DNA from: Mytilus trossulus
Taxonomy: Eukaryota
Assembly: GCF_036588685.1 (NCBI RefSeq)
Contig: NC_086380.1
Span: 44,826,001-44,890,000, forward strand
Direction: 5' to 3'
Length of the DNA: 64,000 bases
The notes under the pieces are model-generated. The model ran no database searches. It saw only the letters and a list, made by a program, of their open reading frames with translations, and was not told the DNA's origin. Shown here piece after piece: positions 7,601 to 63,006 of the stretch. Position 1 is the first letter of the stretch. Every line of letters begins with the position of its first letter. The position numbers were made by a program, and so were the translations under genes.

Positions 7601-10600
7601 TCTCAACTACTTTTAATTACATTCTGAACGACCACTTCATATCAATTATTGATCGTGTTCTAATCGCAACATAACCTCTCATCTTTGTTATATGATTACA
7701 TTTGCTTGTGATAAAATCCGTTCTTACTATCAGTTTTAGCTAATTTTCTAGTAGCAGCCCATAACAAAGAAAGAACAAAATCACAATTGAAAAGAAACAT
7801 TTGAAAAATGAAAACATAATACTACAACATTATTTATTGGCACTAAATTTCATTTAACAAATTGAACTAATTGAAATAAATTAGACTTTACATGAATTTT
7901 GTCCTTGTATTACATTAACTCACCATGCTTAACCCCACACACTTTGATGTATCGTGCATAACTTATAGCTGCAAGGCTTGCTATGCTCACAACGCCACAG
8001 AAAAATCCTATGAAACCATAGGCTGCACAAACTGAAATACATCAGAAATTATATATAGTTCGGGACACTTCTCACTGAAATGTATCAATAATTCGCCAGA
8101 TGATGCATTGTGGAACAAAATATTTTATAATTTAGATTCAAAAGACCTTATGAATGATTTATCAAGAATTAATAATGATGGTAATCATCGGATACAACAT
8201 GGTTCACCAAAGTAAGCAATAAAATAGACTTGAAACTTTTCGCTGCAGTTATATATATTATCCAAATGTGCATGTAAGATTCAAATCGTATGTCTTCGCG
8301 TCCGAATAGAACTTCGTTGCTGGTTTAGTATTCTTTTTTATATTATTTGTGTAGTTTCGGTATGGTCATTTGTAGTATATGAATTGAATCTTTCTTCAAT
8401 TATTAAATTATACCTTCATTTGAAATTTCGAAAATCTTAATACTTAGGCTAGATGCGTATCATCTTCAAATAATGGAGGCTATACAATTTGAAGTATTAA
8501 ATGTTCGTCAAGGAAATTGTTTTGCTAAAATTTTGTCTGAAATGAACCATTCTACTGCCTAAAGAACGCAAAAAAAGTTCTACTCGGATTAACAATAAAA
8601 CACACTTACCAAAATAATACTTACGAAATTCCCCAATAATCCATTGATGATATACAGATGAATAGATTGTCAATGGAAATCCAAACAATGGCATGAACAG
8701 GTCGATGATTGCCAAGTTTAAAATATAAAAATCACACGAAACTAATGATTTCAGCTTGCGTATACACACACACAAGACAAGTCCATTCAAGACTGTTGAC
8801 AAAATACCTATAAAAATATAAAAAGTTGAAATTGTCAATCAATATCTACTGATACTACATGCTATTCATAGACTATGCACGTTAAGTATACTTGTCCAAG
8901 ACTTACTACGAATTTTTTTGGGGGGAAGGTATGTACGATTATAGTTATCAAAGGTACCAGGATTATAATTTAGTACGCCAGACGCGTGTTTCGTCTACAC
9001 AAGACTCATCAGTGACGCTCATATCCATATATTTATTTAGCCAAACAAGTAAAAAGTTGAAGAGCATTGAGGAAATTCGAAAAAACAAGTAAAAAGTTGA
9101 AGAGCATTGAGGAAATTCAAAAAATTGTGCCAAATACGGTTAAAGTAATCTATAAAATTGAGAATGGAAATGGGGAATGTGTCAAAGAGACAACAACCCG
9201 ACCTTAGAAAAAAATAACAGCAGAAGGGCACCAACAGGTCTTCAATGTAGCGAGAAATTCCCGCACCCGGAGGCGTCCTTCAGCTGGCCCCTAAACAAAT
9301 ATATACTAGTTCAGTGATAATGACGGCATCATAATTTTCTAATTGTACACAAGAAACTAAAATTAAAATAATACAAGACTAACAAAGGCCAGAGGCTCCT
9401 GACTTGGAAAAAAATGCGGCGGGGTTAAACATGTTTGTGATATCTCAACCCTCCCCCTACACCTCTAGCCAATGACGAAAAGTAAACGCATAACAATACG
9501 CACATTAAAATTCAGTTCAAGAGAAGTCCGAGTCTCATGTCAGAAGATGTAACCAAAGAAAATAAACAAAATGACAATAATACAAAAATAACAACAGGCT
9601 ACTAGCAGTTAACTGACATTCCAGCTCCAGACTTCAATTAAACTGACTGAAAGATTATGATTTCATCATATGAACATCAGGCACAATCCTTCCCGTTAGG
9701 GTTTTGTTTAGTAGCATACCATCATAACATATATGAAAAGAACATATGCCTGGGATAAGAAAATCCTTAGTTTTGTAAACAGGAAATTTGTAAAAATTAC
9801 CACATTATTGATATTCATGTCAACACAGAAGTGTTGAACACTGGGCTGGTGAAACCCTCGGGGACGAAACGTCCACCAGTAATGGCATCGACCCAGTGTA
9901 AATAGTTATCAAAGGTATCGGGATTATAATTTAGTATCCCAGACGCCGGTTTCGTCTACACAAGACTCACCAGTGACGCTGAAGAGCATTGATCATTAAC
10001 GAAGTTTTTTTTTTGGGGGGGGGGGGGGGGGATCATCGTTTTTAACACTGTCTTGGCCATCCATTCAAATGATATCAAATGATCAACCCAGAATAGCTTA
10101 TTTGATCATATCTGCTACTCAGCTTTATACTAACCTGATCGTGGTTCGTTGTTTGCAAAGGTAAAACTGTGCTTGTCTCAAGGACTAGTATGATTTACTG
10201 TCATTAGCATACGATATGCATCATTCCAAGACCCAAGAGAATTTAATAACTGTCTCTGGTCCAATATATTTTGACGAGAACAAAATAAGGATGGTTCATT
10301 TATATGCATTTACCTACACAATTTCATATCAATATAATAACGTAGTGTCTAGGTAAATTTGAAAATGTTATAACCGACAGTAACAAAGTAAATTAAATCA
10401 TTAATAAAGCAAATACAGTTGTAAGAGAAATTTCGCGACGCTATTGGTTTGGAAGGTCTTCACATTTGTCTAAATAATGCAGTCAATAATGCAGAAGATG
10501 ACTTTTAACACTTGTGCGTCAAAGCAAAAAGACTACGCCATGACAAAAACGGAAAATAACGAAAGACCAACAAGTCAAAGAAAATCTCAATAACGAACTA

Positions 10601-48842: not shown

Positions 48843-50214
48843 GAGATTTTTTTTTTCTTTAAAGACAACGTAAATATATGATGGAAGATACAACGTTCTA
48901 GGTTATTGTAAATTTTAATTATGATTTTGATAAAACAGAATGCATATGTTTATATCAGCTTGAATCGCGTGATCTTTGAAAATTTCGCAAAATTCGTTCA
49001 AATAGATAATCTTGATATGCATACAACAGTATTTGTTTTTGTGAATTTCAAGATTTATATCAATTCAATTTTTCAATTCAAAGTTTTAATGCCATAAATA
49101 TTTTACAGTTTGTGACATAAAACAAGAACAAAAACAAATAAAGACAATAACTAAGTAACTCAATATATATAACCAAATTTAGATAAATGTTAAAGGGTCC
49201 CCTGTCCTCAGTAATGTAGTCAATAGATTTAGCTCAAGTCCTTTTTAAGAATCAAATATGCATAATTACATTTACTCATGTTTTCATGTTAACAATCGTG
49301 TATACACTTTTCGAAAAACAATGAAAATTTCATTGTTGGATAATGATCTTTTTCGATTAAAAATTAATTTAATAGATTAAATATAATCCAAATGCATGCA
49401 TTAAAAAAGAAACCTCTCTCATAATGGATACTAGGATAATGACTTTATCACACGATTCGTATTTCATTTACAAAAGACGAAATAAACAAAAATGAACTAA
49501 ACACTGGCTCCTCTGGGATTTCAGCGGTTCCCTTATGTTTTATAATTTTGTCTTGAATTTATTTTAATCTTAAAGAATTTATAAGCTTTGAACATCGGAT
49601 ACCTACTATTGCCTCTAATTTAATAAAACATAATATTTGTGTAGGTGGATAATGTTTTGTACAAATAAAGAAGTTATAAATGTGTAGCCTTTTCATTGCC
49701 ATTTTATCTTATAAGCCTGGTACTCTTAATTACTATTATCTAATTTGTGGTTTACTAATTGGATAGAGAGGTCGGACGTAGTTCAGCTCATTAGTGCGAT
49801 GACCTCTATAATATCTAGAAAATGTTGAAATGGCTAAATTTTGTCTTCATCAATCATTTGTATGCTGCACACGTTCAAGCATACAAAAGCTAGACATGTG
49901 TTTAACCTCCGGGTGCGGCATTTTCTCGCGGCATTGAAGACCCATTAGAGGTTGTTATCTGCTCTTTTGTATGATTGTCTCCTGGACGTATTACCAATTT
50001 TCCATTCTAAATTTCATATATATAAAATAACTTTTTTCATTTAATTTAAAGGGAATTGAAAAAAGTGCATAACGAATATTTTCGAATGTAATTACTGTCT
50101 CACTAATTAGCATAATTATTTTTGTTACTGTTTGGATCATACACAACTATAATTTAAATGTTGAAAATATCTCAAATTGTACATACATTTATGTCAATTT
50201 CACATTTTCCTCCT

Positions 50215-50484
50215 TCAAATTAATAAAATGAAATATTTAAAGAATGATAGATACAAAACGACCATATAGGAACCATAATCATTGATTGCACCACTGTTGA
50301 TATCGCTATCATTTGACTGCATATCACAAGTTCCAAATGTATTCCAACTACAGCTGCCATTTTGATCACGACCACAATATCCTCTGTATATTAAACATGG
50401 CTTATATAAAGGCATACACTCCTTGGAACTATTAAATGAAATTGATGTCATGTTAGTCGAGTCCACAGTTAAAGGTTCACGTAT
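50215..50484 (-). CDS. TIMP-like exon 5 (C-domain and hydrophobic tail)
   Basis: Acceptor TTCTTGCAG|ATA; encodes IREPL...ECMPLYKPCLIYRGYCGRDQNGSCSWNTFGTC...MVVLYLSFFKYFILLI then stop. Confidence 0.82.
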   Translation of the reverse strand: MREPLTVDSTNMTSISFNSSKECMPLYKPCLIYRGYCGRDQNGSCSWNTFGTCDMQSNDSDINSGAINDYGSYMVVLYLSFFKYFILLI

Positions 50485-53400
50485 CTGCAAGAAAAATGTT
50501 GAAATAATGTGACCGTAACACGTATGTGTCTAAAACATTTTTTTTGTTTAACGAATAACTAAATGAAGAAGTTAAAGTAAATGATGCAGAGGCTGCATTT
50601 TCTGCATTCAAGAAAATCCAATGAAAATTACTTGCGATCCGGATTATCATAAACAAATGTTTATTTATATATGTTTTAAACCCAATTAAACAGAAACAAG
50701 TTTTCGAAAGGCTCACGTAGTGCATTTAACCATATTTGAAAAAAAATCAATGTTTTCTTTTGTTTTTACTTATTTTATAAAACTTTATCGGGGCATTTTA
50801 TAGCTTTTTTATGCTGTATTGTTGGCTTCATTGTTGAAAGCCGTACAGTGCTTACCGTTATCAATATCTACGTCATTTTGCGTATATTAGATAGTTGTCT
50901 CATTAGTAATCATAGCAATCATTAAACATCTCCTTATTTTATATTTGAATTGAAATCCTGTTACTTTTGTTTAAATGAACAGATGTGTAACGTATATGAA
51001 TATTTAAGAATGATACTAATAAATACATATCCTTACAATTGATTCTTAACGACAAATAGTTCATGCATGTTAAGGATTATAACAAATTTCTTTTTCAATA
51101 CAGCTCATAGCATATAACTGATGGAAATTATACAAAGGCATAGTGACCTAATAACAGAAATCATTTTAGGATATTTATAGCGATGAATGACAATCATAAT
51201 TTAATGGTATATATAAATGTGTTAATATTGAGCTTGATTTATTGCTTTCTTAACGACAAATAAAACACAGGTTTCCGGAATTACACGGCAGCATCAATTA
51301 TATACACTGACAAAGTATTTTATCTAATTAAATCGATCAGATATGTTTATTGTTATGATGTATGCTTGTCTTCGTCTTAAACGTATGAACTAAGATGTGC
51401 AAATCTTACAAACTAATTCAAGTAACAATGTAACCGAGGTTATACGGCTTTAACTTTTGTATATTAAAAATATATTTGAAGCTCTTGCTATTTCTTCTTA
51501 ATATATATATATGATAGGTAAAGATTACTATAAATCATGTTTTCATATATAACCATATATAATCTCAAGGCTTTGCCAAAGATATAATGAGATGGAGGTA
51601 AGTCGTAACTACTTATGTGAAAACTGGTACCTAATCATATCTTCTCTGTCAATTTCTACTGCTGTATTTAAAAGTAAATATATGTATGTCCTTTGTTCAC
51701 TAGGTTACTGATTGGCAATCATGTCACAACTTTTTGCATAAATATATATATACACATTCTACCACTGCATCGAGACAGTTACAATTTCGATTGCAAAAAA
51801 ATATTGCCAACGTATATTCTTATCTTTCACTTGCAGTTGGTTAATACTTAACGCTATAGACATTGTCTTAATCGGAACATTTTGAAAAATAACTGAATTT
51901 TCCGGCAAATCATAGAAGACCTAACCTTGTCAGGTGTTATATAAAAAGGCAAGAAATTACTAATCATTTTCTAAAATGTCATGCCTGAAAAAAGATAGTC
52001 AATTTAATGTTAATAAAATGCATGAATCTTACAGACATGTAGAATTGTAACTATATTAGTATCAACAGATTATTATTTTTTATTAAGGTATTAGACGCAG
52101 ACTGATTTAAATTGTTTTTAGCTTTACAAGTTAAATACATGTCCTTAATATGAATACATACGATACCTGCACGACTTGATATGGATTATGAATCGTGACT
52201 CTCAATATTCAAAACCATCACAATAAGTCTTAATATGTGTGATAAGTATACATTAATGCACATCATTTCATATCGGTCAAAACGTAATGTCTATGTGTTT
52301 GCAGAAAGATTTGGTGTGCAATAGAGGAAATTCATAAGCATAGATGTGAAAACTGGTGTCTCGTAATATCTTTTCCATCAATGCCTGCTGCTGTGTTGTC
52401 AAAATGCATGTCATATTCGCAATCATATCAAAATGCCATATTACAAACATAGTTTTTGCTCAGTCTTTAGTTTTCTATGTTTACTGTTGTTTGTGTGTTG
52501 GTCTTTTTTTTTTAAGCCATGGTATTGTCAGTTGATATTTGACTGATAAGTTAGAATGTCACTTTGGTATATTTTGCCTCTCTTCTTTTAGGCGCAAACT
52601 GTTTACAATCCTTAACAGTTTATTCACATAAATATTTGAATACGTCATTAATCTTGATATAGACGCAACCTGTACGATTTCATATAAATTATAAATCATG
52701 ACTCTCGTCCGTTTTGATTACGATCAAATGAAAATTCATTCTGATATTGAATGTTTACGTCTATCCGGTCATTACATAAAAATTACATACAAAAGTATGA
52801 ATATCGTTTCTAAATGTACGAATGAAGCATTGCAACGTACAGTGCGGTGATAGTTTTACTATATATCTATATCAAACCGTTAAAGACTATGTGTTATATA
52901 ATGGTAAATTTCATTGTAAGTTTTCATTTGTGAGATGGTCATGGCTGACTCAAAAAAGGTGTTTGATGAGTTAAAGCGCTAGCCTTATTTCAGGTGGAGT
53001 TGCCCCGATGCCATTGGGGGATAGGACTGGAGGTATATATAAATTTGCGTTCTTACATTGGGACTTTTGTCTGGAAATAATCATAAACAGTATAATTATA
53101 ATGTTTCATACAAGTAAACATTCCAAGTATAAATAGTGAAAAAATAGCATTTATTCTTGGTAGTTATTTTTTTTAAATAAATCAATATGACTTTTAGCCT
53201 TTGGAACACACATTTCGATATCTCCTATAGACATTTTTTTCAAATATTACCCAATGAGGGTATCATTCTTTGGTTGGCGCTCTATTAGAGGAAAAACAGA
53301 TTAAACAGATATTTTTAGAAAAACTATTTAAAACACATTCATATAAATTCAAGATCACCTTTATATAAAGGATTTAAAAAAAAAAACGCTATCGAAAACG

Positions 53401-56400
53401 AAATAAAGGATATTTAGTGATGAATTTAAACCTGTTATTGTGACTTTTTAAACTTTCATCACTTTTTGTTTATACCAGAGCCGTATACGTATTATAAACC
53501 AGATTAATCACAAAAGCCATATATCAATTGCTTTATTTCCAGTGTTTTTATTGGATATAAATAATATATTACCGTTTTTTTCTAAAGGTAAACAACTGCA
53601 GAATCTTAGTTTTAAATCTGCTGACATTATGTTAAATGTTGTTATCGAACTTGTATATCTTGGAGTATCATTTCTAGGAACATGAACTTTCACAGCAGCG
53701 AAAAGACATAAGCTGAGAACGCAACAGTGGCTATAATTTTTATGAACAATATTTTAAAAAGCGGAGGTTACATAATTTGAACATTTTGAAATGTAATCTT
53801 GAATTATTTGACAGTAGTTAAGCCAATATTACTGTACATGTGTGAAGTCTAGGGAATGGGTAACACCTCTGTTACAGCACATGCTATAGCACATGTTCGT
53901 CTTAAATTTTCTGACATACTGCGTGATCTTAACAAATCAACTCTTGACTTTGAATTTGATCAATTCTCACTGGATATTATTTATCAAATTACGAATTATT
54001 GAGCAAAGCTAGTAATTGGAGAGGAAAAGAAACGTCCTTGTATTCTGTATACAATCAGCTGGTTACTGATAATTTCAATGGATGCATAGTTTGATGTAAG
54101 AATGTGCTTTATAATTGTAGTCTATCAACTATAATTTATTAACAAATTTATAAGTAAAAAATGATTGTATTATACTGTTAAATTACGATTAACTGACCAG
54201 TTCAGAAAGACATGGTATGCTACTCTCCAGAACTTCCCGTTAGCTCTTTTAAAAATATAGATTATTAAAAAAAAACAGTCTAAATTTCGAAACCTACTTT
54301 AAATATTTTAAATGACACAAAAAAGGTTGCTTCATTTTGTAGTTTAAGAACTTTGAATCACCAAAACATTCCATAGAAATTGGTTAATGGCAGAATATTC
54401 AGAGAGAAAAGTGTTTTTGTCTTTCTGTAATTCCTGTAATATTGGCAACGAATTTCATAAGGTTTAAATTCTTCGGTACTAGACGAAAGTAGACAAACGC
54501 TATACAAGTATTATTTTGTGTGCAGACCATATATGATGTGCAAATTTATACGAATAATTAATAAATGCTTAAAATTTTCTGGGTAACCACTTGTTTTCTG
54601 TATTTTACATTTTACTTAAGTTTTATACTAGGTGTTTTAATCTATTTGTGTATATCTCTTTATAATTTTACTTTTGATTCCGAGAATGATAATACTTATT
54701 ATAAAATCCTATCGGGCTGTCACTGGCTAATACAGGACTCTGTGAGGGGAAAATGGAAAAGGATCATAGAATATATGGTGTCGCACAAGCAATGCTCAGT
54801 GAAGAAAAAATACTAAAAAAATAGTTTAGAAATTACCATCCACACTGATCTCTGTCCACACTTGTATACAACATTCTTCCTTATAAAAAAATAAAATTGT
54901 GTACAAAACAAAAGGCATCCCTAATTATCGGTGTTCCTACCTGACAGCTGCAATCATAAAAATGTGTAATGTGCCGAACATCTTCTGATAAGGGCTCTGT
55001 GTATTCATATAGTACAGGAACATCCGTTGAGTTATCTTTGTTTGCTGAAAATAAATCCTCATTTACTACTGTCTAAATAAGACAACAACTCTCTACGTAG
55101 AAATATAATGATAGGATATGCATACGATTTGTCGTAGTTGTACAAAACATTAAGAAATGAATATCAAGAAAGAAATGGGGTTTTACCATTTCACCTGAAC
55201 TTTATGCAATATTGATCTTATCTATATGTTTCGTGGTAGACAAGTGTCTCATGTTACAAATGCTAGCATACTTATCTCCAATTTGTGTTTAATCAAACTA
55301 ACCTCGTGAATTGTTTTGATCATACATACCATATATTAGGTACTTTTTACTGGGTTCCATACTCTGATTAAAGTGTTCACAAACACCAAAACATCTTATG
55401 GATCCACTGAAGTTCTTGAGGAGACTTGATCCATTCTATGTTTAAAAAAGAATATCGTATACATAATGTTTCCTGTTTTCTTTTATGTTGTATACAAAAC
55501 AAAATTGTCTTTCTAATAAGGGTCTTTTTTTGTGTCTGGTCCTACATTCAGTTGACGTTCTTTCATTTTGAAATGCATCACTGTTGCACTATCTAACCAG
55601 AAATGTACGTCTTTTCTGATATATCTGCATGGTAGCTTTTTGACAAGATATAGCGCTACATTTTTGTATAAAAACCATTCGTTCGTTGTCATGTTGAAAT
55701 TTATATGCAAATACTCTAAAGATAATAAGATTGCCTGATTTATATTTTTATTACGTTTTGAAGCTAAATGTAAGGGTCACCAGTCCAATTCGGTGTGTTT
55801 TCTCTGATCCCTAGAGTGATTTTTATAGAGTTTTTAACAGACGATCGTTTAGCAAAATATCGTTTCATAAACTGAACGATTAACAGCGGTCAGTAAAGTT
55901 TAAATTGACATGATTTGTAACATACTCTCCGGAATGGGTTTTGTGGTGTGGGTTTTGCTCATTCACGGTTGAAGAATGCACGGTGACCTATTACAGTTAT
56001 TTGTTCTATGTCAGTTGGTCTCAAGTGGTCTCATTGGGAATCATACCATACGATCTTATGTTCTTTGCTTGACTTCTCTGTTGACAAATCAAGAAATTAT
56101 TAAGAAACTAAGGTTCCAAATCCCTCAGCCGAAGTTGGCTTGTTTTTACTTTCAAGTATTATTTTTTTTCTGTGTTTCTTGTGAAGGTATACCAAGAAAA
56201 GCGTTTCTGGAGGCACGAAAATTTATAAAACATTATTTACATATAAGGTATATAAACAAAAGATACCTTATAAGTATGTAGTATATCAACTTTGTATGTT
56301 CTGTTCTCCATATTTTCCAAGCGCTCTTCATATGTCGCGTTTTCAGAATCTGTATTTGTCCACTTTATAACACGTGCCTCAAATACTACAACATACATTT

Positions 56401-57639
56401 CATATCTATAAATTTTCCTTTCATTTTTTGTACATAAATAATGCCATTAGTTTTCTCGTTTGAAATGTTTTATATGGTCATTTCGGGCCTTTTATAGCTT
56501 ACTATGCGATATTGGCTTTGCTTATTGTTGAAGGCCGTATGCTGACCTATAAATTTTAATTTCTGTGTCATTTTGGTCTCTTGTGGAGAGTTGTCTCACT
56601 GGCAATCATACCACATCTTTTTTTTTAATAGATATAATGTATTGCGTCAACTATCTTGCAATTTTCATATATTACAATCAGTAATCATGATTTTTCTGTG
56701 CCTAACATCATATTCTTTTTTAATTATTTGGAATTTAATCATTATTATTTCAAAGCAGTCAAATTGCAGAATAATTTGTGTACCAGGATACATTTCGTTA
56801 AGTATCACCAGTCTTGTTTAACAAACGATGTACTTGTACATGTATTTTCAAAACCTTAAATATACATGCATGTACTAAATAATTGCAGTAGAAACCTATA
56901 AAGCATATGAATGAATAAAAATCCATATTATGCATCAAATCAATTCTATTTTCGCATGCACCATGTGCATTTCTAAGCCTTATTGTCTCTGAATTATTTT
57001 TTACTGTCATAAACAATTTATTTTAATTTTAGTTTAGGAAACTTATTATGCAACAGGGTTTTGTTCTGGTAATTTAAGGAAAATCGTTTATATTAAATTT
57101 CTGCGGTTTAATCATATCTATGTTGCAAATTGTGTTTTGAATACATAAAAAATCCCCTCGGAAATCTCATTAATATTTTCATTTAATTTCAAAAAGAAAA
57201 AAAATATTTGAAAGATTTTGTTCATACAAAATAGACATAAAAAAATTTATGACATGAACGGATTGGACATATCCTCATTTTGCTGTTAGAATAACCTGCA
57301 TGTAAGGTAATAGTTCGTTAGTCTCCATTGTTTTTCGTCACCACAATAGGTGCAGATAAATTGTTCAGATCTTCATCCTTTGATCTACACACTGTACGAG
57401 TAGCTGTCTCAATGGCAATTATACCACCGTGTGACTCTTTAAAAAAAAATGATCATTTTGTTATACAATGTTTTCAGTAACCGTTCAATATTAAATAAAA
57501 ATATCGTACCGAAATCTGAATGGCAGAATTTGCTCTGAGAATGAAGATATGTCGGTATGCATCCTAGAATTTGAGAAACTATAGTAAGGAAAAGAAATAA
57601 ATTCACAAAGACGGATAGTGGCTGAAGTAAGGACGACAT
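50215..57639 (-). CDS. TIMP: Divergent TIMP (NTR-domain) family gene, 5 coding exons, 242 aa: join(57510..57639, 56267..56385, 55330..55435, 54941..55044, 50215..50484)
   Basis: Exons of 130+119+106+104+270 nt sum to 729 nt in one frame, with intron phases 1,0,1,0 at TIMP-like positions. A signal peptide precedes CIPTYLHSQSKFCHSDFVFEARV (cf. CxCxxxHPQxxFCxSDxVIRAK). Further motifs are YKVDILHTYK, KKYLIY, YDCSCQI and YCGRDQNGSCSW. Confidence 0.85.
54941..55044 (-). CDS. TIMP-like exon 4
   Basis: Acceptor TTTTCAG|CA; encodes ANKDNSTDVPVLYEYTEPLSEDVRHITHFYDCSCQ; donor CAG|GTAGG. Confidence 0.82.
55330..55435 (-). CDS. TIMP-like exon 3
   Basis: Acceptor CATAG|AAT; encodes NGSSLLKNFSGSIRCFGVCEHFNQSMEPSKKYLIY; donor G|GTATGT. 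Confidence 0.8.
56267..56385 (-). CDS. TIMP-like exon 2
   Basis: Acceptor TTGTAG|TA; encodes VFEARVIKWTNTDSENATYEERLENMENRTYKVDILHTYK; donor AAG|GTATC. Confidence 0.85.
57510..57639 (-). CDS. TIMP-like exon 1 (signal peptide and N-terminus)
   Basis: Encodes MSSLLQPLSVFVNLFLFLTIVSQILG|CIPTYLHSQSKFCHSDF; donor G|GTACG is phase 1. Confidence 0.85.
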
Positions 57640-61877: not shown

Positions 61878-63006
61878 AAAGAGGGACGAAAGATACCAAA
61901 GGGACAGTCAAACTCATAAATCTAAAACAAACTGACAACGCCATGGCTAAAAATGAAAAAGACAAACAGAAAAACAATAGTACACATGACACAACATAGA
62001 AAACTAAAGAATAAACAACACGAACCCCACCAAAAACTAGGGGTGATCTCATGTGCTCCGGAAGGGTAAGCAGATCCTGCTCCACATGCAGCACCCGTCG
62101 TGTTGCTTATGTGATTACAAATCCGGTAAATAGTCTAATTCGGTAGGTCAAATTCATGAAAGGGAAGGTGATTGTAGTTACGACGTACGGAACATATCCG
62201 ATATCATTTGTGAAATGGTTATTCCATAACGGTCAACCAACTCGTGATGGCGTCCGTAAAAAGTAAAATCACAAAAATACTGAACTCAGAGGAAAATCAA
62301 TTTGGAAAGTCCATAATCACATGGCAAAATCAAAAAACAAAATTTACGAAGGGATGATTTCAACTTCACCATTTGGAACTCTTGATTTAAAAGCTTCCTT
62401 GTGAGCAGTAACCCTCTATCAAGAAAATCATGATAGGAAATGCAAGCACGGGAATATCGTATCAATTGAGAGATATATACCCCGTATGCAGGTGCTGCTG
62501 GAATGTTGCTACTTAGAAATGGAAAGTTCACAATTAGAAAGCTGAAATCATCTCTTTTGTCGTAAAGTTTTGTCTTCAACCGACCCTCATTGTCAATTTC
62601 TAGATGTAAGTCAAGATATGAAGCTGACTTAACTCTATCTGTAGTATCCTTTATCTCCAATTCGATGGGATAGATGCGTTCCACATAGTCACCAAATTTT
62701 GAATTGTTTAGTGAAAGAACGTCATCTATATAGCGGAAAGTAGAGTTAAAGGATATTGCTAACTTCTTATCTTTCTTCCTAAGAAGTTCCTGCATGAAGT
62801 CAGCCTCATAATAATAAAGAAACAAGTCAGCAAGTAGAGGGGCACAGTTTGTTCCCATTGGGATGCCGACAGTCTGTTGAAAAACACGTCCTCCGAACGT
62901 AACAAATATGTTGTCAATCCATCTTGATAATATCGGTTTCAGAGAATTTTTTGTTTGAATCAGAGTGATTCTTTACAAAGTAGGATTTATCCCTCCCTAA
63001 GACAAG
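61878..63006 (-). mobile_element. Penelope-like retroelement, 5'-truncated, RT disrupted
   Basis: ORF 62286-62858 has GTNCAPLLADLFL, FRYIDD, YLDL, YDKRDDF and SNIP..AYGVYISQLIRY; an ~80-bp family E insertion at 62261-62338 breaks the C-terminus. Confidence 0.88.

What the first reader, a model, noticed from the sequence alone, without database searches (positions are those of the whole stretch)
50215..57639. Hidden TIMP-family gene predicted to be membrane-tethered (GPI-like tail) and heavily glycosylated
Seen: five in-frame exons give a 242-aa protein with a signal peptide and TIMP motifs. After the C-domain comes a polar spacer (DMQSNDSDINSGAINDYGSY) and a terminal hydrophobic stretch (MVVLYLSFFKYFILLI-stop). 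There are ten N-x-S/T sequons (NAT, NRT, NGS, NFS, NQS, NST, NMT, NSS, NGS, NDS). Established: classical TIMPs are soluble or matrix-bound with few glycans. Inference: this is a cell-surface TIMP class with an omega site near N-S-G, acting as a surface protease regulator or receptor-like protein.
Basis: partly seen in the sequence, partly recalled or inferred. Interest (0 to 1): 0.8.

Follow-up and report, generated by a model that had tools for sequence, protein, structure and literature searches.

The report
Mussel TIMP with a GPI-like tail
This is a real, transcribed mussel gene for a divergent metalloproteinase-inhibitor (TIMP) protein that, unlike known natural TIMPs, ends in a conserved sequence that looks like a signal for lipid anchoring to the cell surface, though that anchoring is still only predicted.

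Summary
Five minus-strand exons (57639..50215) with GT-AG borders give 242 aa. A spliced contig in public run X1 joins E5/E4 and E4/E3 exactly as predicted and runs on into E2. The gene is not hidden: each exon translation is an exact piece of RefSeq 'uncharacterized protein LOC134681936' of Mytilus trossulus (P0007). That protein scores 43.3 bits on Pfam TIMP (cut-off 23.1), although single exons score nothing. It lacks the C-x-C motif (C-I-P) and the partner cysteine. The spacer plus hydrophobic tail keeps frame and stop in M. edulis and M. galloprovincialis, with Ser-Gly-Ala at the likely omega site. Nine of ten N-glycan sequons are kept there; shuffling expects 2.8. The closest oyster homologue and four paralogue last exons end at or just after the last cysteine, so the tail is a lineage-specific addition. 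No GPI predictor or experiment was available, so anchoring is inferred (about 0.6). Four literature searches showed no natural GPI-anchored TIMP; the GPI-TIMP rows I could judge are recombinant or designer constructs. Verdict: a new variant of a known kind, of moderate interest. The scan noted the same stretch once before (s1-821137).

The parts
57510..57639 (-). Exon 1 (phase 1 at its 3' end). It holds the start codon, a signal-peptide-like stretch (residues 1-26, 57562-57639), then Cys27 (the TIMP 'Cys1' place) followed by I-P instead of x-C, an H-S-Q motif and F-C-H-S-D.
   Evidence: exact substring of P0007 residues 1-43. The donor is GT.
56267..56385 (-). Exon 2 (residues 44/45-83), N-domain strands, with sequons N59 and N71.
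   Evidence: The loose end of the X1 contig behind 55437 reads this exon's 3' end.
55330..55435 (-). Exon 3 (residues 84-118/119), with sequons N84, N91 and N106, Cys98 (private to this assembly), Cys102 and K-Y-L-I-Y.
   Evidence: Joint 55044/55330 in the X1 contig.
54941..55044 (-). Exon 4 (residues 119/120-153), with sequon N123, no Cys at the place of the Cys3 partner, and D-C-S-C at the domain border.
   Evidence: Joints 50484/54941 and 55044/55330.
50215..50484 (-). Exon 5 coding part plus stop (50215-50217). It holds the C-domain with five Cys (residues 154-206), the polar spacer and the hydrophobic tail.
   Evidence: It is 79% identical to the C-terminus of the M. edulis protein P0001 over all 89 residues.
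50266..50325 (-). Polar, small-residue spacer (residues 207-226). The candidate omega triplet Ser217-Gly218-Ala219 lies at 50287-50295.
   Evidence: S217 and G218 are invariant in all five rows of alignment A1.
50218..50265 (-). Terminal hydrophobic stretch of 16 residues (227-242) that runs to the stop codon.
   Evidence: Mean hydropathy 2.23. 13 of 16 residues are identical in M. galloprovincialis and M. edulis, and the three changes are M>L, S>I and K>T.

Best explanation
A single-copy, transcribed Mytilus trossulus gene (RefSeq LOC134681936, so far 'uncharacterized protein') encodes a divergent two-domain TIMP. After signal-peptide removal the protein would start with the zinc-binding Cys1. 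It has lost the Cys3 / Cys99-101 disulfide as a pair, leaving five of the six canonical disulfides. In the Mytilus lineage it has gained 9-10 N-glycan sequons and a 36-residue C-terminal extension. That extension has the four regions of a GPI-attachment signal: a flexible polar linker, a small omega triplet Ser-Gly-Ala, a short spacer, and a hydrophobic end with no cytoplasmic residues. Most likely the tail is exchanged for a GPI anchor in the ER. The heavily glycosylated TIMP fold would then sit on the outer leaflet, where it binds or inhibits membrane-proximal metzincins. Shown here: the gene model, transcription, family membership, and conservation of the tail and sequons. Inferred: signal cleavage before Cys27, GPI attachment, glycan occupancy and protease inhibition.
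For: Splicing is shown in an X1 contig. No second genomic copy exists that could be a retrocopy. The protein is identical to P0007, and the contig that carries P0007 has the same length, 80,675,551, as contig C8. Pfam TIMP gives 43.3 bits against a cut-off of 23.1. The orthologue P0005 also gives 43.3 bits. The A2 profile against the PDB matches 7 of 7 TIMP-1/2 sequences, best E 0.0021, aligned 21-193 to TIMP-2 2-177. The ESM Atlas's own model has TM 0.67 to a 'metalloproteinase inhibitor 4' cluster (a lead only). The tail keeps the same frame and stop in P0007, P0005 and P0001, and its substitutions keep or raise hydrophobicity (2.23 to 2.88). The X1 and X2 contigs cover the E5 coding part, and no left-out or put-in letters are listed inside it. 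My rule set passes P0007, P0005 and P0001 with omega at S-G-A, and only 3 other frames of 558 in the window. P0004, 42% identical, has the same order of C-domain, small/polar spacer with S-G, and hydrophobic end. Nine of ten sequons are kept in both orthologues.
Against: No GPI or signal-peptide predictor was available, and there is no experiment. The tail is encoded by AT-rich codons of the kind that non-coding DNA here also yields. It evolves about as fast as the C-domain: 13/16 against 43/53 identical to P0005. It holds a Lys in M. trossulus. P0004/P0006 fail my crude rules because they carry Gln-Lys near the end. The oyster homologue P0010 lacks the tail. Inhibitor function is doubtful. 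The C-x-C motif is absent, one ridge disulfide is missing, and sequons lie just before the Cys102 and Tyr-for-Cys loops. Single exons give no Pfam TIMP hit (0 of 5), and the six-frame PF00965 scan of the genome misses this locus (25 matches, none here). Both AlphaFold models are poor, with pLDDT 34.8 and 41.3. RNA evidence is one contig in one run whose RNA label is a guess.
Confidence: 0.55

Rival explanations
1. Secreted, soluble TIMP-like protein. On this reading the C-terminal extension is a tolerated read-through into former 3' UTR, or a propeptide removed for another reason, and has no anchoring role.
For: The oyster homologue, and 4 of 4 paralogue last exons I could recognise, end 0-6 residues after the last Cys. 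The tail is AT-rich and no better conserved than the C-domain. P0004's tail fails the crude rules.
Against: Frame, length and stop are kept in three species and in the X1 transcript. All three tail substitutions go to hydrophobic or neutral residues. S-G at the omega place is invariant down to 42% identity. Only 3 of 558 other open frames in the window look like this.
Confidence: 0.2
2. Type I membrane protein. On this reading the 16-residue hydrophobic end stays as a transmembrane helix without any cytoplasmic tail.
For: There is a signal-like N-terminus and a hydrophobic C-terminus. Both AlphaFold models draw residues 223/224-241 as a helix, at low confidence.
Against: Sixteen residues is short for a bilayer span (established knowledge). 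There is no positive stop-transfer flank. A Lys sits inside the stretch in M. trossulus. A small-residue triplet lies 7-10 residues upstream, as in GPI signals.
Confidence: 0.12
3. Whatever its anchoring, the protein is not a protease inhibitor. On this reading it is a TIMP-fold binding or structural protein, as proposed for other atypical bivalve TIMP-like proteins of byssus or shell.
For: C-I-P replaces C-x-C, and Pro and Tyr/Pro sit at the places of Cys3 and its partner. This loss is shared with the oyster homologue, which has C-Q-P. The protein is densely glycosylated. A scallop byssal 'atypical metalloproteinase inhibitor-like protein' exists (PMC5975577; search listing and start of abstract only).
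Against: Cys at the predicted mature N-terminus, the H-x-Q motif and F-C-x-S-D are kept in Mytilus and in oyster. A hydrophobic residue 2 (Ile/Val) would fit an S1' pocket (my knowledge of TIMP-MMP complexes, not tested).
Confidence: 0.35

Closest known systems
Vertebrate TIMP-1 to TIMP-4 (Pfam PF00965; PDB 1bqq, 1br9, 7s7l and others)
   Same: Two-domain layout. The Pfam model is matched over positions 5-183. The profile aligns to TIMP-2 residues 2-177. Cys sits at the mature N-terminus, with H-x-Q, F-C-x-S-D, Y-L-I, the C-x-C at the domain border and the C-x-R-x-x-x-G-x-C-x-W motif.
   Different: There is no N-terminal C-x-C, and the partner Cys is also gone. It has ten (here eleven) Cys instead of twelve. 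It has ten sequons, against none to two in human TIMPs as I recall. It carries a 36-residue extension with a GPI-like signal, whereas the vertebrate proteins are secreted or matrix-bound.
Crassostrea virginica LOC111128126 (P0010), the closest non-Mytilus full-length homologue found
   Same: 29-32% identity over 81% of the query. It has C-Q-P instead of C-x-C, the same ten Cys, F-C-S-S-D-F-V-F, K-Y-L-I-Y-A, Y-D-C-H-C and R-G-Y-C-S-R.
   Different: It ends at the last Cys with no spacer and no tail. It has one sequon by my reading.
Engineered TIMP-1-GPI and other designer membrane-anchored TIMPs
   Same: A TIMP fold joined to a GPI signal to focus it on the cell surface. This is the architecture predicted here.
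   Different: Those are laboratory fusions of human TIMPs (PMC3338742, PMC4156787, PMC9680204, PMC6359047; search listing and starts of abstracts only). This one is a natural gene.
RECK, the known natural GPI-anchored MMP inhibitor
   Same: It would work alike: a GPI-anchored, glycosylated inhibitor of metalloproteinases at the cell surface (PMC11809362, search listing and start of abstract; the rest is my knowledge).
   Different: The fold is unrelated (Kazal-like and Cys-knot motifs) and there is no homology to TIMPs.
Atypical bivalve and echinoderm TIMP-like proteins
   Same: Invertebrate TIMP families are expanded, and some members lack the C-x-C and/or the HPQ site (PMC8467561, section 3.1 read; PMC4860685, passages).
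   Different: Neither paper's text that I searched mentions a C-terminal anchor on a TIMP. In PMC10755359 'GPI' and 'transmembrane' occur 0 times. In PMC4860685 'GPI' occurs 0 times, and 'transmembrane' refers only to N-terminal signal regions.

Membership tests
TIMP (Pfam PF00965) | Whole-protein score above Pfam's gathering cut-off | tested here: met
   P0007, identical to the exon translations, scores 43.3 bits, E 4.4e-11, against a cut-off of 23.1, with residues 27-200 on model positions 5-183. P0005 also scores 43.3 bits. P0001, which lacks exon 1, scores 22.1 bits, just under the cut-off. Exon by exon, 0 of 5 hit.
TIMP (Pfam PF00965) | N-terminal C-x-C motif right after the signal peptide | tested here: not met
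   The sequence reads G26|C27-I-P. M. galloprovincialis has C-V-P and the oyster has C-Q-P. The first Cys is present and the second is replaced by Pro, which aligns to Cys3 of TIMP-2.
TIMP (Pfam PF00965) | Twelve conserved Cys forming six disulfides | tested here: not met
   P0007 has 11 Cys, and P0005 and P0010 have 10. The Cys3 place and its partner's place (TIMP-2 L-C-D-F) carry no Cys. Cys98 reads Gly in runs X1, X3 and X4 and in both orthologues. The pairing itself is inferred from the canonical pattern, which I recall.
TIMP (Pfam PF00965) | TIMP fold: an OB-type N-domain plus a C-domain | tested here: inconclusive
   The AlphaFold models are poor, with pLDDT 34.8 and 41.3. Foldseek with the second model gave 0 matches at E<=0.001, but 9 of the first 10 rows are TIMP-1/2, best E 1.3e-3 and TMq 0.30. 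The ESM Atlas's own model (pLDDT 0.62) has TM 0.67 and 0.59 to TIMP-4-named clusters.
TIMP (Pfam PF00965) | Inhibition of metzincin proteases through the free N-terminal Cys | not testable with these tools
   This needs recombinant protein and enzyme assays.
GPI-anchored proteins | Cleavable N-terminal signal peptide | tested here: inconclusive
   Read from the sequence only. There is a hydrophobic core at residues 8-21, with Ile at -3 and Gly at -1 before Cys27. The oyster homologue has Ile at -3 and Ser at -1 before its Cys. No SignalP was available.
GPI-anchored proteins | Hydrophobic C-terminal segment that reaches the C-terminus with no cytoplasmic residues | tested here: met
   The last 16 residues have mean hydropathy 2.23 in P0007 and 2.88 in P0005 and P0001.
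GPI-anchored proteins | Small residues at omega and omega+2, a 5-10 residue spacer, and a polar linker upstream | tested here: met
   S217-G-A passes my rule set in P0007, P0005 and P0001. P0004, P0006 and P0010 do not pass. The background is 4 of 559 open frames, this one included. The rules are my own crude version of published descriptions, not a validated predictor.
GPI-anchored proteins | Positive call by a trained predictor, or PI-PLC release | not testable with these tools
   NetGPI, PredGPI and big-PI were not available, and there is no experiment.

The most novel reading that the evidence does not exclude
This is the first natural membrane-tethered TIMP. In the mussel lineage a soluble C-x-P-type TIMP gained a GPI signal from its own 3' end, together with a dense N-glycan coat. 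That made a cell-surface protease shield or protease-docking molecule. Nature would thus have arrived at the same design that bioengineers built as TIMP-1-GPI.
Probability: 0.5. Interest if true: 0.6.

Novelty: new variant of a known kind. Interest (0 to 1): 0.45.

Why it matters
TIMPs are textbook secreted inhibitors. Membrane targeting has been added to them only by design, to focus inhibition on MT-MMPs and ADAMs. A natural GPI-anchored, heavily glycosylated TIMP would show that this solution also exists in animals. It would offer a natural scaffold that tolerates loss of the Cys3 disulfide. It would also give a simple case of how a GPI signal can arise by C-terminal extension, since the oyster homologue and the paralogues end at the last cysteine. 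For mussel biology it points to pericellular protease control in tissues still to be identified. The claim is directly testable with standard expression, PI-PLC and PNGase F assays.

Tried and rejected
- **Pfam exon by exon:** 0 of 5 exons hit TIMP at E<=10. The six-frame PF00965 scan of the genome gave 25 matches, none in this locus. Taken alone this would have denied the family. It reflects short exons and divergence, because the full-length database protein passes.
- **Word search with E5:** it was blank. This was expected from the length limits and says nothing.
- **P0002 and P0003:** these two hits of the big search are a 3,022-aa tunicate protein and a lungfish receptor tyrosine phosphatase. 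They match through 15 and 9 short repeated stretches. I set them aside as motif-level similarity multiplied by repeats.
- **P0005 alone against the PDB:** the top row was a pilus protein at E 0.055, and TIMP-2 came only at E 0.66-0.87. The A2 profile did better.
- **AlphaFold, two runs with 5 and 8 rows:** both were poor. The Foldseek rows are therefore weak support only.
- **The alternative in-frame donor at 55303:** it would keep Y-L-I-Y-G. I rejected it because the X1 contig and three RefSeq models use 55330.
- **The 'odd cysteine count':** I rejected it as a family trait. Cys98 is Gly everywhere else.
- **Paralogue tails:** I fetched 8 loci. The tool cut each to 10,000 bases. In the four minus-strand loci (L001-L003, L008) this left out the first 1.6-2.4 kb downstream of the PF00965 exon, and no last exon was recognised there. 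Those four were dropped. In the other four a last exon was recognised by position and by the C-x-R...G-x-C-x-W motif, and all four lack a tail. Pfam did not name these short exons, so their identity is inferred.
- **Origin of P0004:** it therefore stays unknown.
- **The search of earlier findings by words:** nothing came back.
- **Supplements of papers:** I did not ask for them. The TIMP catalogues in the supplements of PMC10755359 and PMC8467561 may hold domain or anchor predictions that I could not see.
Full report
**What is in the sequence**

The region is AT-rich (GC about 0.29-0.32). With the flanking bases printed and located, the exons are:

- E1 57639..57510
- E2 56385..56267
- E3 55435..55330
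- E4 55044..54941
- E5 50484..50218, with the stop at 50217..50215

All introns start GT and end AG. The intron phases are 1, 0, 1 and 0, and the total is 726 nt, or 242 codons. A second in-frame donor exists at 55303.

**Transcription and splicing**

The sequencing-run search listed one run guessed to be RNA (X1, holding 0.06 of the sampled words) and four runs of another study that hold about a quarter of the words. I laid 49800-55799, which is 6,000 letters.

- One 749-letter X1 contig lies on 50209-50484, 54941-55044 and 55330-55437.
- Its joints are 50484/54941 and 55044/55330, with ends CT..AC.
- Its loose end behind 55437 reads the 3' end of E2.
- So three of the four junctions are seen, and donor 55330 is the one used.
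- The E1/E2 junction lay outside the stretch.

Every exon is single-copy in the 1.30-Gb genome. E2, E3 and E4 find only themselves. E5 finds itself plus one match at E 0.5. E1 finds itself plus five matches at E 0.155-7.8. The spliced contig is therefore not a retrocopy of this assembly. The caveats are that X1's RNA label is a guess, it is one contig in one run, and contigs cannot show level or strand.

**Identity**

- Exon by exon, Pfam gave no TIMP hit (0 of 5).
- The PF00965 six-frame scan of the genome gave 25 matches, none in this locus.
- The word search with E5 was blank.
- The exhaustive HMMER search with E5 gave four proteins at E<=0.001.
  - P0001 is M. edulis XP_071179384.1, 208 aa, 79% identical, with residues 120-208 aligned to all 89 E5 residues.
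  - P0004 is a 95-aa Logan open frame, 42% identical.
  - The other two match only through 15 and 9 short repeats and were set aside.
- The cluster look-up added P0005, M. galloprovincialis LOC143076111, 225 aa.
- A word search with P0005 returned P0007, 'uncharacterized protein LOC134681936 [Mytilus trossulus]', 242 aa.

All five exon translations are exact substrings of P0007. The contig that carries P0007 has the same length as contig C8 of this genome, 80,675,551. The window is therefore M. trossulus, and the gene is already modelled in RefSeq, though unnamed.

**Family**

- P0007 scores 43.3 bits (E 4.4e-11, cut-off 23.1) on Pfam TIMP, with residues 27-200 on model positions 5-183. It scores 23.0 bits on NTR against a cut-off of 21.9.
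- P0005 gives the same TIMP score.
- P0001, which lacks exon 1, gives 22.1 bits.
- A profile of four homologues (A2) matched seven PDB sequences at E<=10. All are TIMP-1 or TIMP-2, the best at E 0.0021, aligned to TIMP-2 residues 2-177.
- P0005 alone against the PDB was weak. Its top row, a pilus protein at E 0.055, is probably chance.
- Two AlphaFold runs were poor, with pLDDT 34.8 and 41.3.
- Foldseek with the second model had no match at E<=0.001, but 9 of the first 10 rows are TIMPs.
- The ESM Atlas holds this sequence. Its own model has TM 0.67 to a TIMP-4-named cluster. This is a lead only.

**Departures from the family**

- The mature N-terminus would read C-I-P, not C-x-C.
- In the alignment to TIMP-2, Pro sits at Cys3, and no Cys sits at the place of its partner.
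- The Mytilus orthologues (C-V-P) and the closest non-Mytilus homologue, oyster P0010 (C-Q-P, 29-32% identical), share this and have ten Cys.
- The eleventh Cys of the window (Cys98) reads Gly in X1, X3 and X4 and in both orthologues.

**The tail**

After the last Cys (C206) come 20 polar or small residues and then 16 hydrophobic residues up to the stop.

- Mean hydropathy is -1.09 for the 20 residues and 2.23 for the last 16.
- P0005 and P0001 keep the frame, the length and the stop. 13 of 16 tail residues are identical, and the changes M>L, S>I and K>T raise hydropathy to 2.88.
- The tail is not better conserved than the C-domain (43/53) or the spacer (16/20).
- Of the 18 differences in E5 between the window and the X1 transcript, 16 are listed. 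They make 8 residue replacements and 6 silent codon changes. None lies in the tail codons, and all Cys are kept. The two unlisted differences are unknown.
- S217 and G218 are invariant in all five rows of A1, including P0004 and P0006, which also end in a hydrophobic stretch after a small/polar spacer.
- A crude rule set of my own passes P0007, P0005 and P0001 with omega at S-G-A. It requires a polar linker, small omega and omega+2, a 5-10 residue spacer, and a hydrophobic end with at most one charge.
- The same rule set fails P0004, P0006 and P0010. It passes 4 of 559 open frames of at least 40 aa in the window, one of which is this exon.
- No trained predictor was available, so GPI attachment remains an inference.

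**Is it a class?**

- The profile of A1 finds only this gene's five exons in the genome.
- The oyster homologue ends at its last Cys.
- Of eight PF00965 paralogue loci fetched, four gave a recognisable last exon, and all four end 0-6 residues after the last Cys. Pfam does not name such short exons, so their identity rests on position and motif.
- The other four loci were uninformative, because the tool returned only the first 10,000 bases of each region I asked for.
- The extension is therefore a lineage-specific addition, seen in three Mytilus species and one unnamed relative.

**Glycosylation**

The mature protein has ten sequons, against 2.80 +/- 1.47 in shuffles (P about 1e-4). Nine are kept in both orthologues. 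The oyster homologue has one, by my reading. Occupancy is untested.

**Literature**

Four searches found no natural GPI- or membrane-anchored TIMP.

- TIMP + GPI + bivalve gave 2 papers, which were irrelevant. I checked passages of one, PMC7853314.
- 'tissue inhibitor of metalloproteinase' + GPI-anchored + invertebrate gave 10 papers.
- Six phrases such as 'GPI-anchored TIMP' gave 19 papers.
- TIMP + glycosylphosphatidylinositol + hydrophobic C-terminal + mollusc gave 7 papers, of which 6 were listed.
- The GPI-TIMP papers whose titles or abstract starts let me judge are recombinant or designer constructs. I saw the search listing only.
- In PMC10755359 the words GPI and transmembrane occur 0 times in the main text.
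- In PMC4860685 GPI occurs 0 times, and 'transmembrane' refers to N-terminal signal regions.
- In PMC8467561 the passages shown to me (8 of the places that hold the terms) put transmembrane and GPI remarks on MMPs. Section 3.1 on TIMPs, which I read, mentions TIMP-like proteins without C-x-C but no anchor.
- Subscription journals and supplements were not searched.

**Verdict**

This is a transcribed, divergent TIMP with a conserved, lineage-specific C-terminal extension that has the sequence anatomy of a GPI signal, and with conserved dense sequons. Anchoring (about 0.6), glycan occupancy and inhibitor function (about 0.4-0.5) are inferred. It is a new variant of a known kind, of moderate interest.

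Noticed in passing
window 55391-55393 (codon of Cys98): The window reads TGT (Cys). Contigs of X1, X3 and X4 read GGT (Gly), as do the M. edulis and M. galloprovincialis proteins. The eleventh cysteine is a private allele or an assembly-specific base.
   Followed up: yes
window 50209-50484 versus 54941-55437: Between the window and the X1 transcript, E5 has 18 differences in 276 letters, while E4 has 0 in 104 and E3 has 1 in 108. Of the 16 differences I could translate, 8 codons change the residue and 6 are silent, and several replacements match the M. edulis/galloprovincialis state. The C-domain and spacer evolve much faster than the N-domain.
   Followed up: partly
window 49800-49999 and 54800-54999: Summed contig depth in the DNA-like runs X2-X4 is 190-400 here, against about 1-5 elsewhere, and many loose ends occur at 49905/49946 and 54834/54866. 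These are high-copy repeats just 3' of the gene and inside intron 4, close to E4.
   Followed up: no
window 49800-50093: A second X1 contig (666 letters, minus strand) covers this stretch and runs on below 49800. It may be the 3' UTR of the gene or a transcribed repeat. It is not joined to the coding contig, which starts at 50209.
   Followed up: no
window 8497-8838 (-): An open frame of 113 aa matches Pfam 7tm_1, the rhodopsin-type receptor family, at 33.2 bits against a cut-off of 30.5. It is probably an exon of a GPCR gene.
   Followed up: partly
window 62286-62858 (-): An open frame of 190 aa has no Pfam hit at E<=0.01. From memory its Y-I-D-D-like stretch recalls reverse-transcriptase fragments common in mollusc genomes. 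I did not test this.
   Followed up: partly
G000:C8:79084838-79198133: A group of PF00965 N-terminal-exon matches (79084838, 79098664) and weak matches to this gene's E1 (79176689 at E 0.155, 79198026 at E 1.26) lies about 34 Mb away on the same contig. It may be a TIMP-like gene cluster.
   Followed up: no
L001:2457-5159 (-), i.e. within G000:C1:42948000-42957999: A 901-aa open frame lies downstream of a TIMP paralogue exon. By eye it looks like a retrotransposon reverse-transcriptase polyprotein. I ran no family scan on it.
   Followed up: no
P0003 residues about 350-850: A lungfish receptor tyrosine phosphatase carries at least 9 repeats of a C...G-Y-E-P...C-x-R-N...G...W...C unit. These align with the three last-exon cysteines of the TIMP C-domain. 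I took this for motif-level resemblance. It is unexplained.
   Followed up: partly
ESM Atlas, query P0007: The nearest cluster by language-model features (score 0.92) is a 293-aa 'hypothetical protein' cluster without a Pfam family, commonest in Cnidaria. It ranks ahead of the clusters named TIMP. It may be another unnamed TIMP-like group.
   Followed up: no
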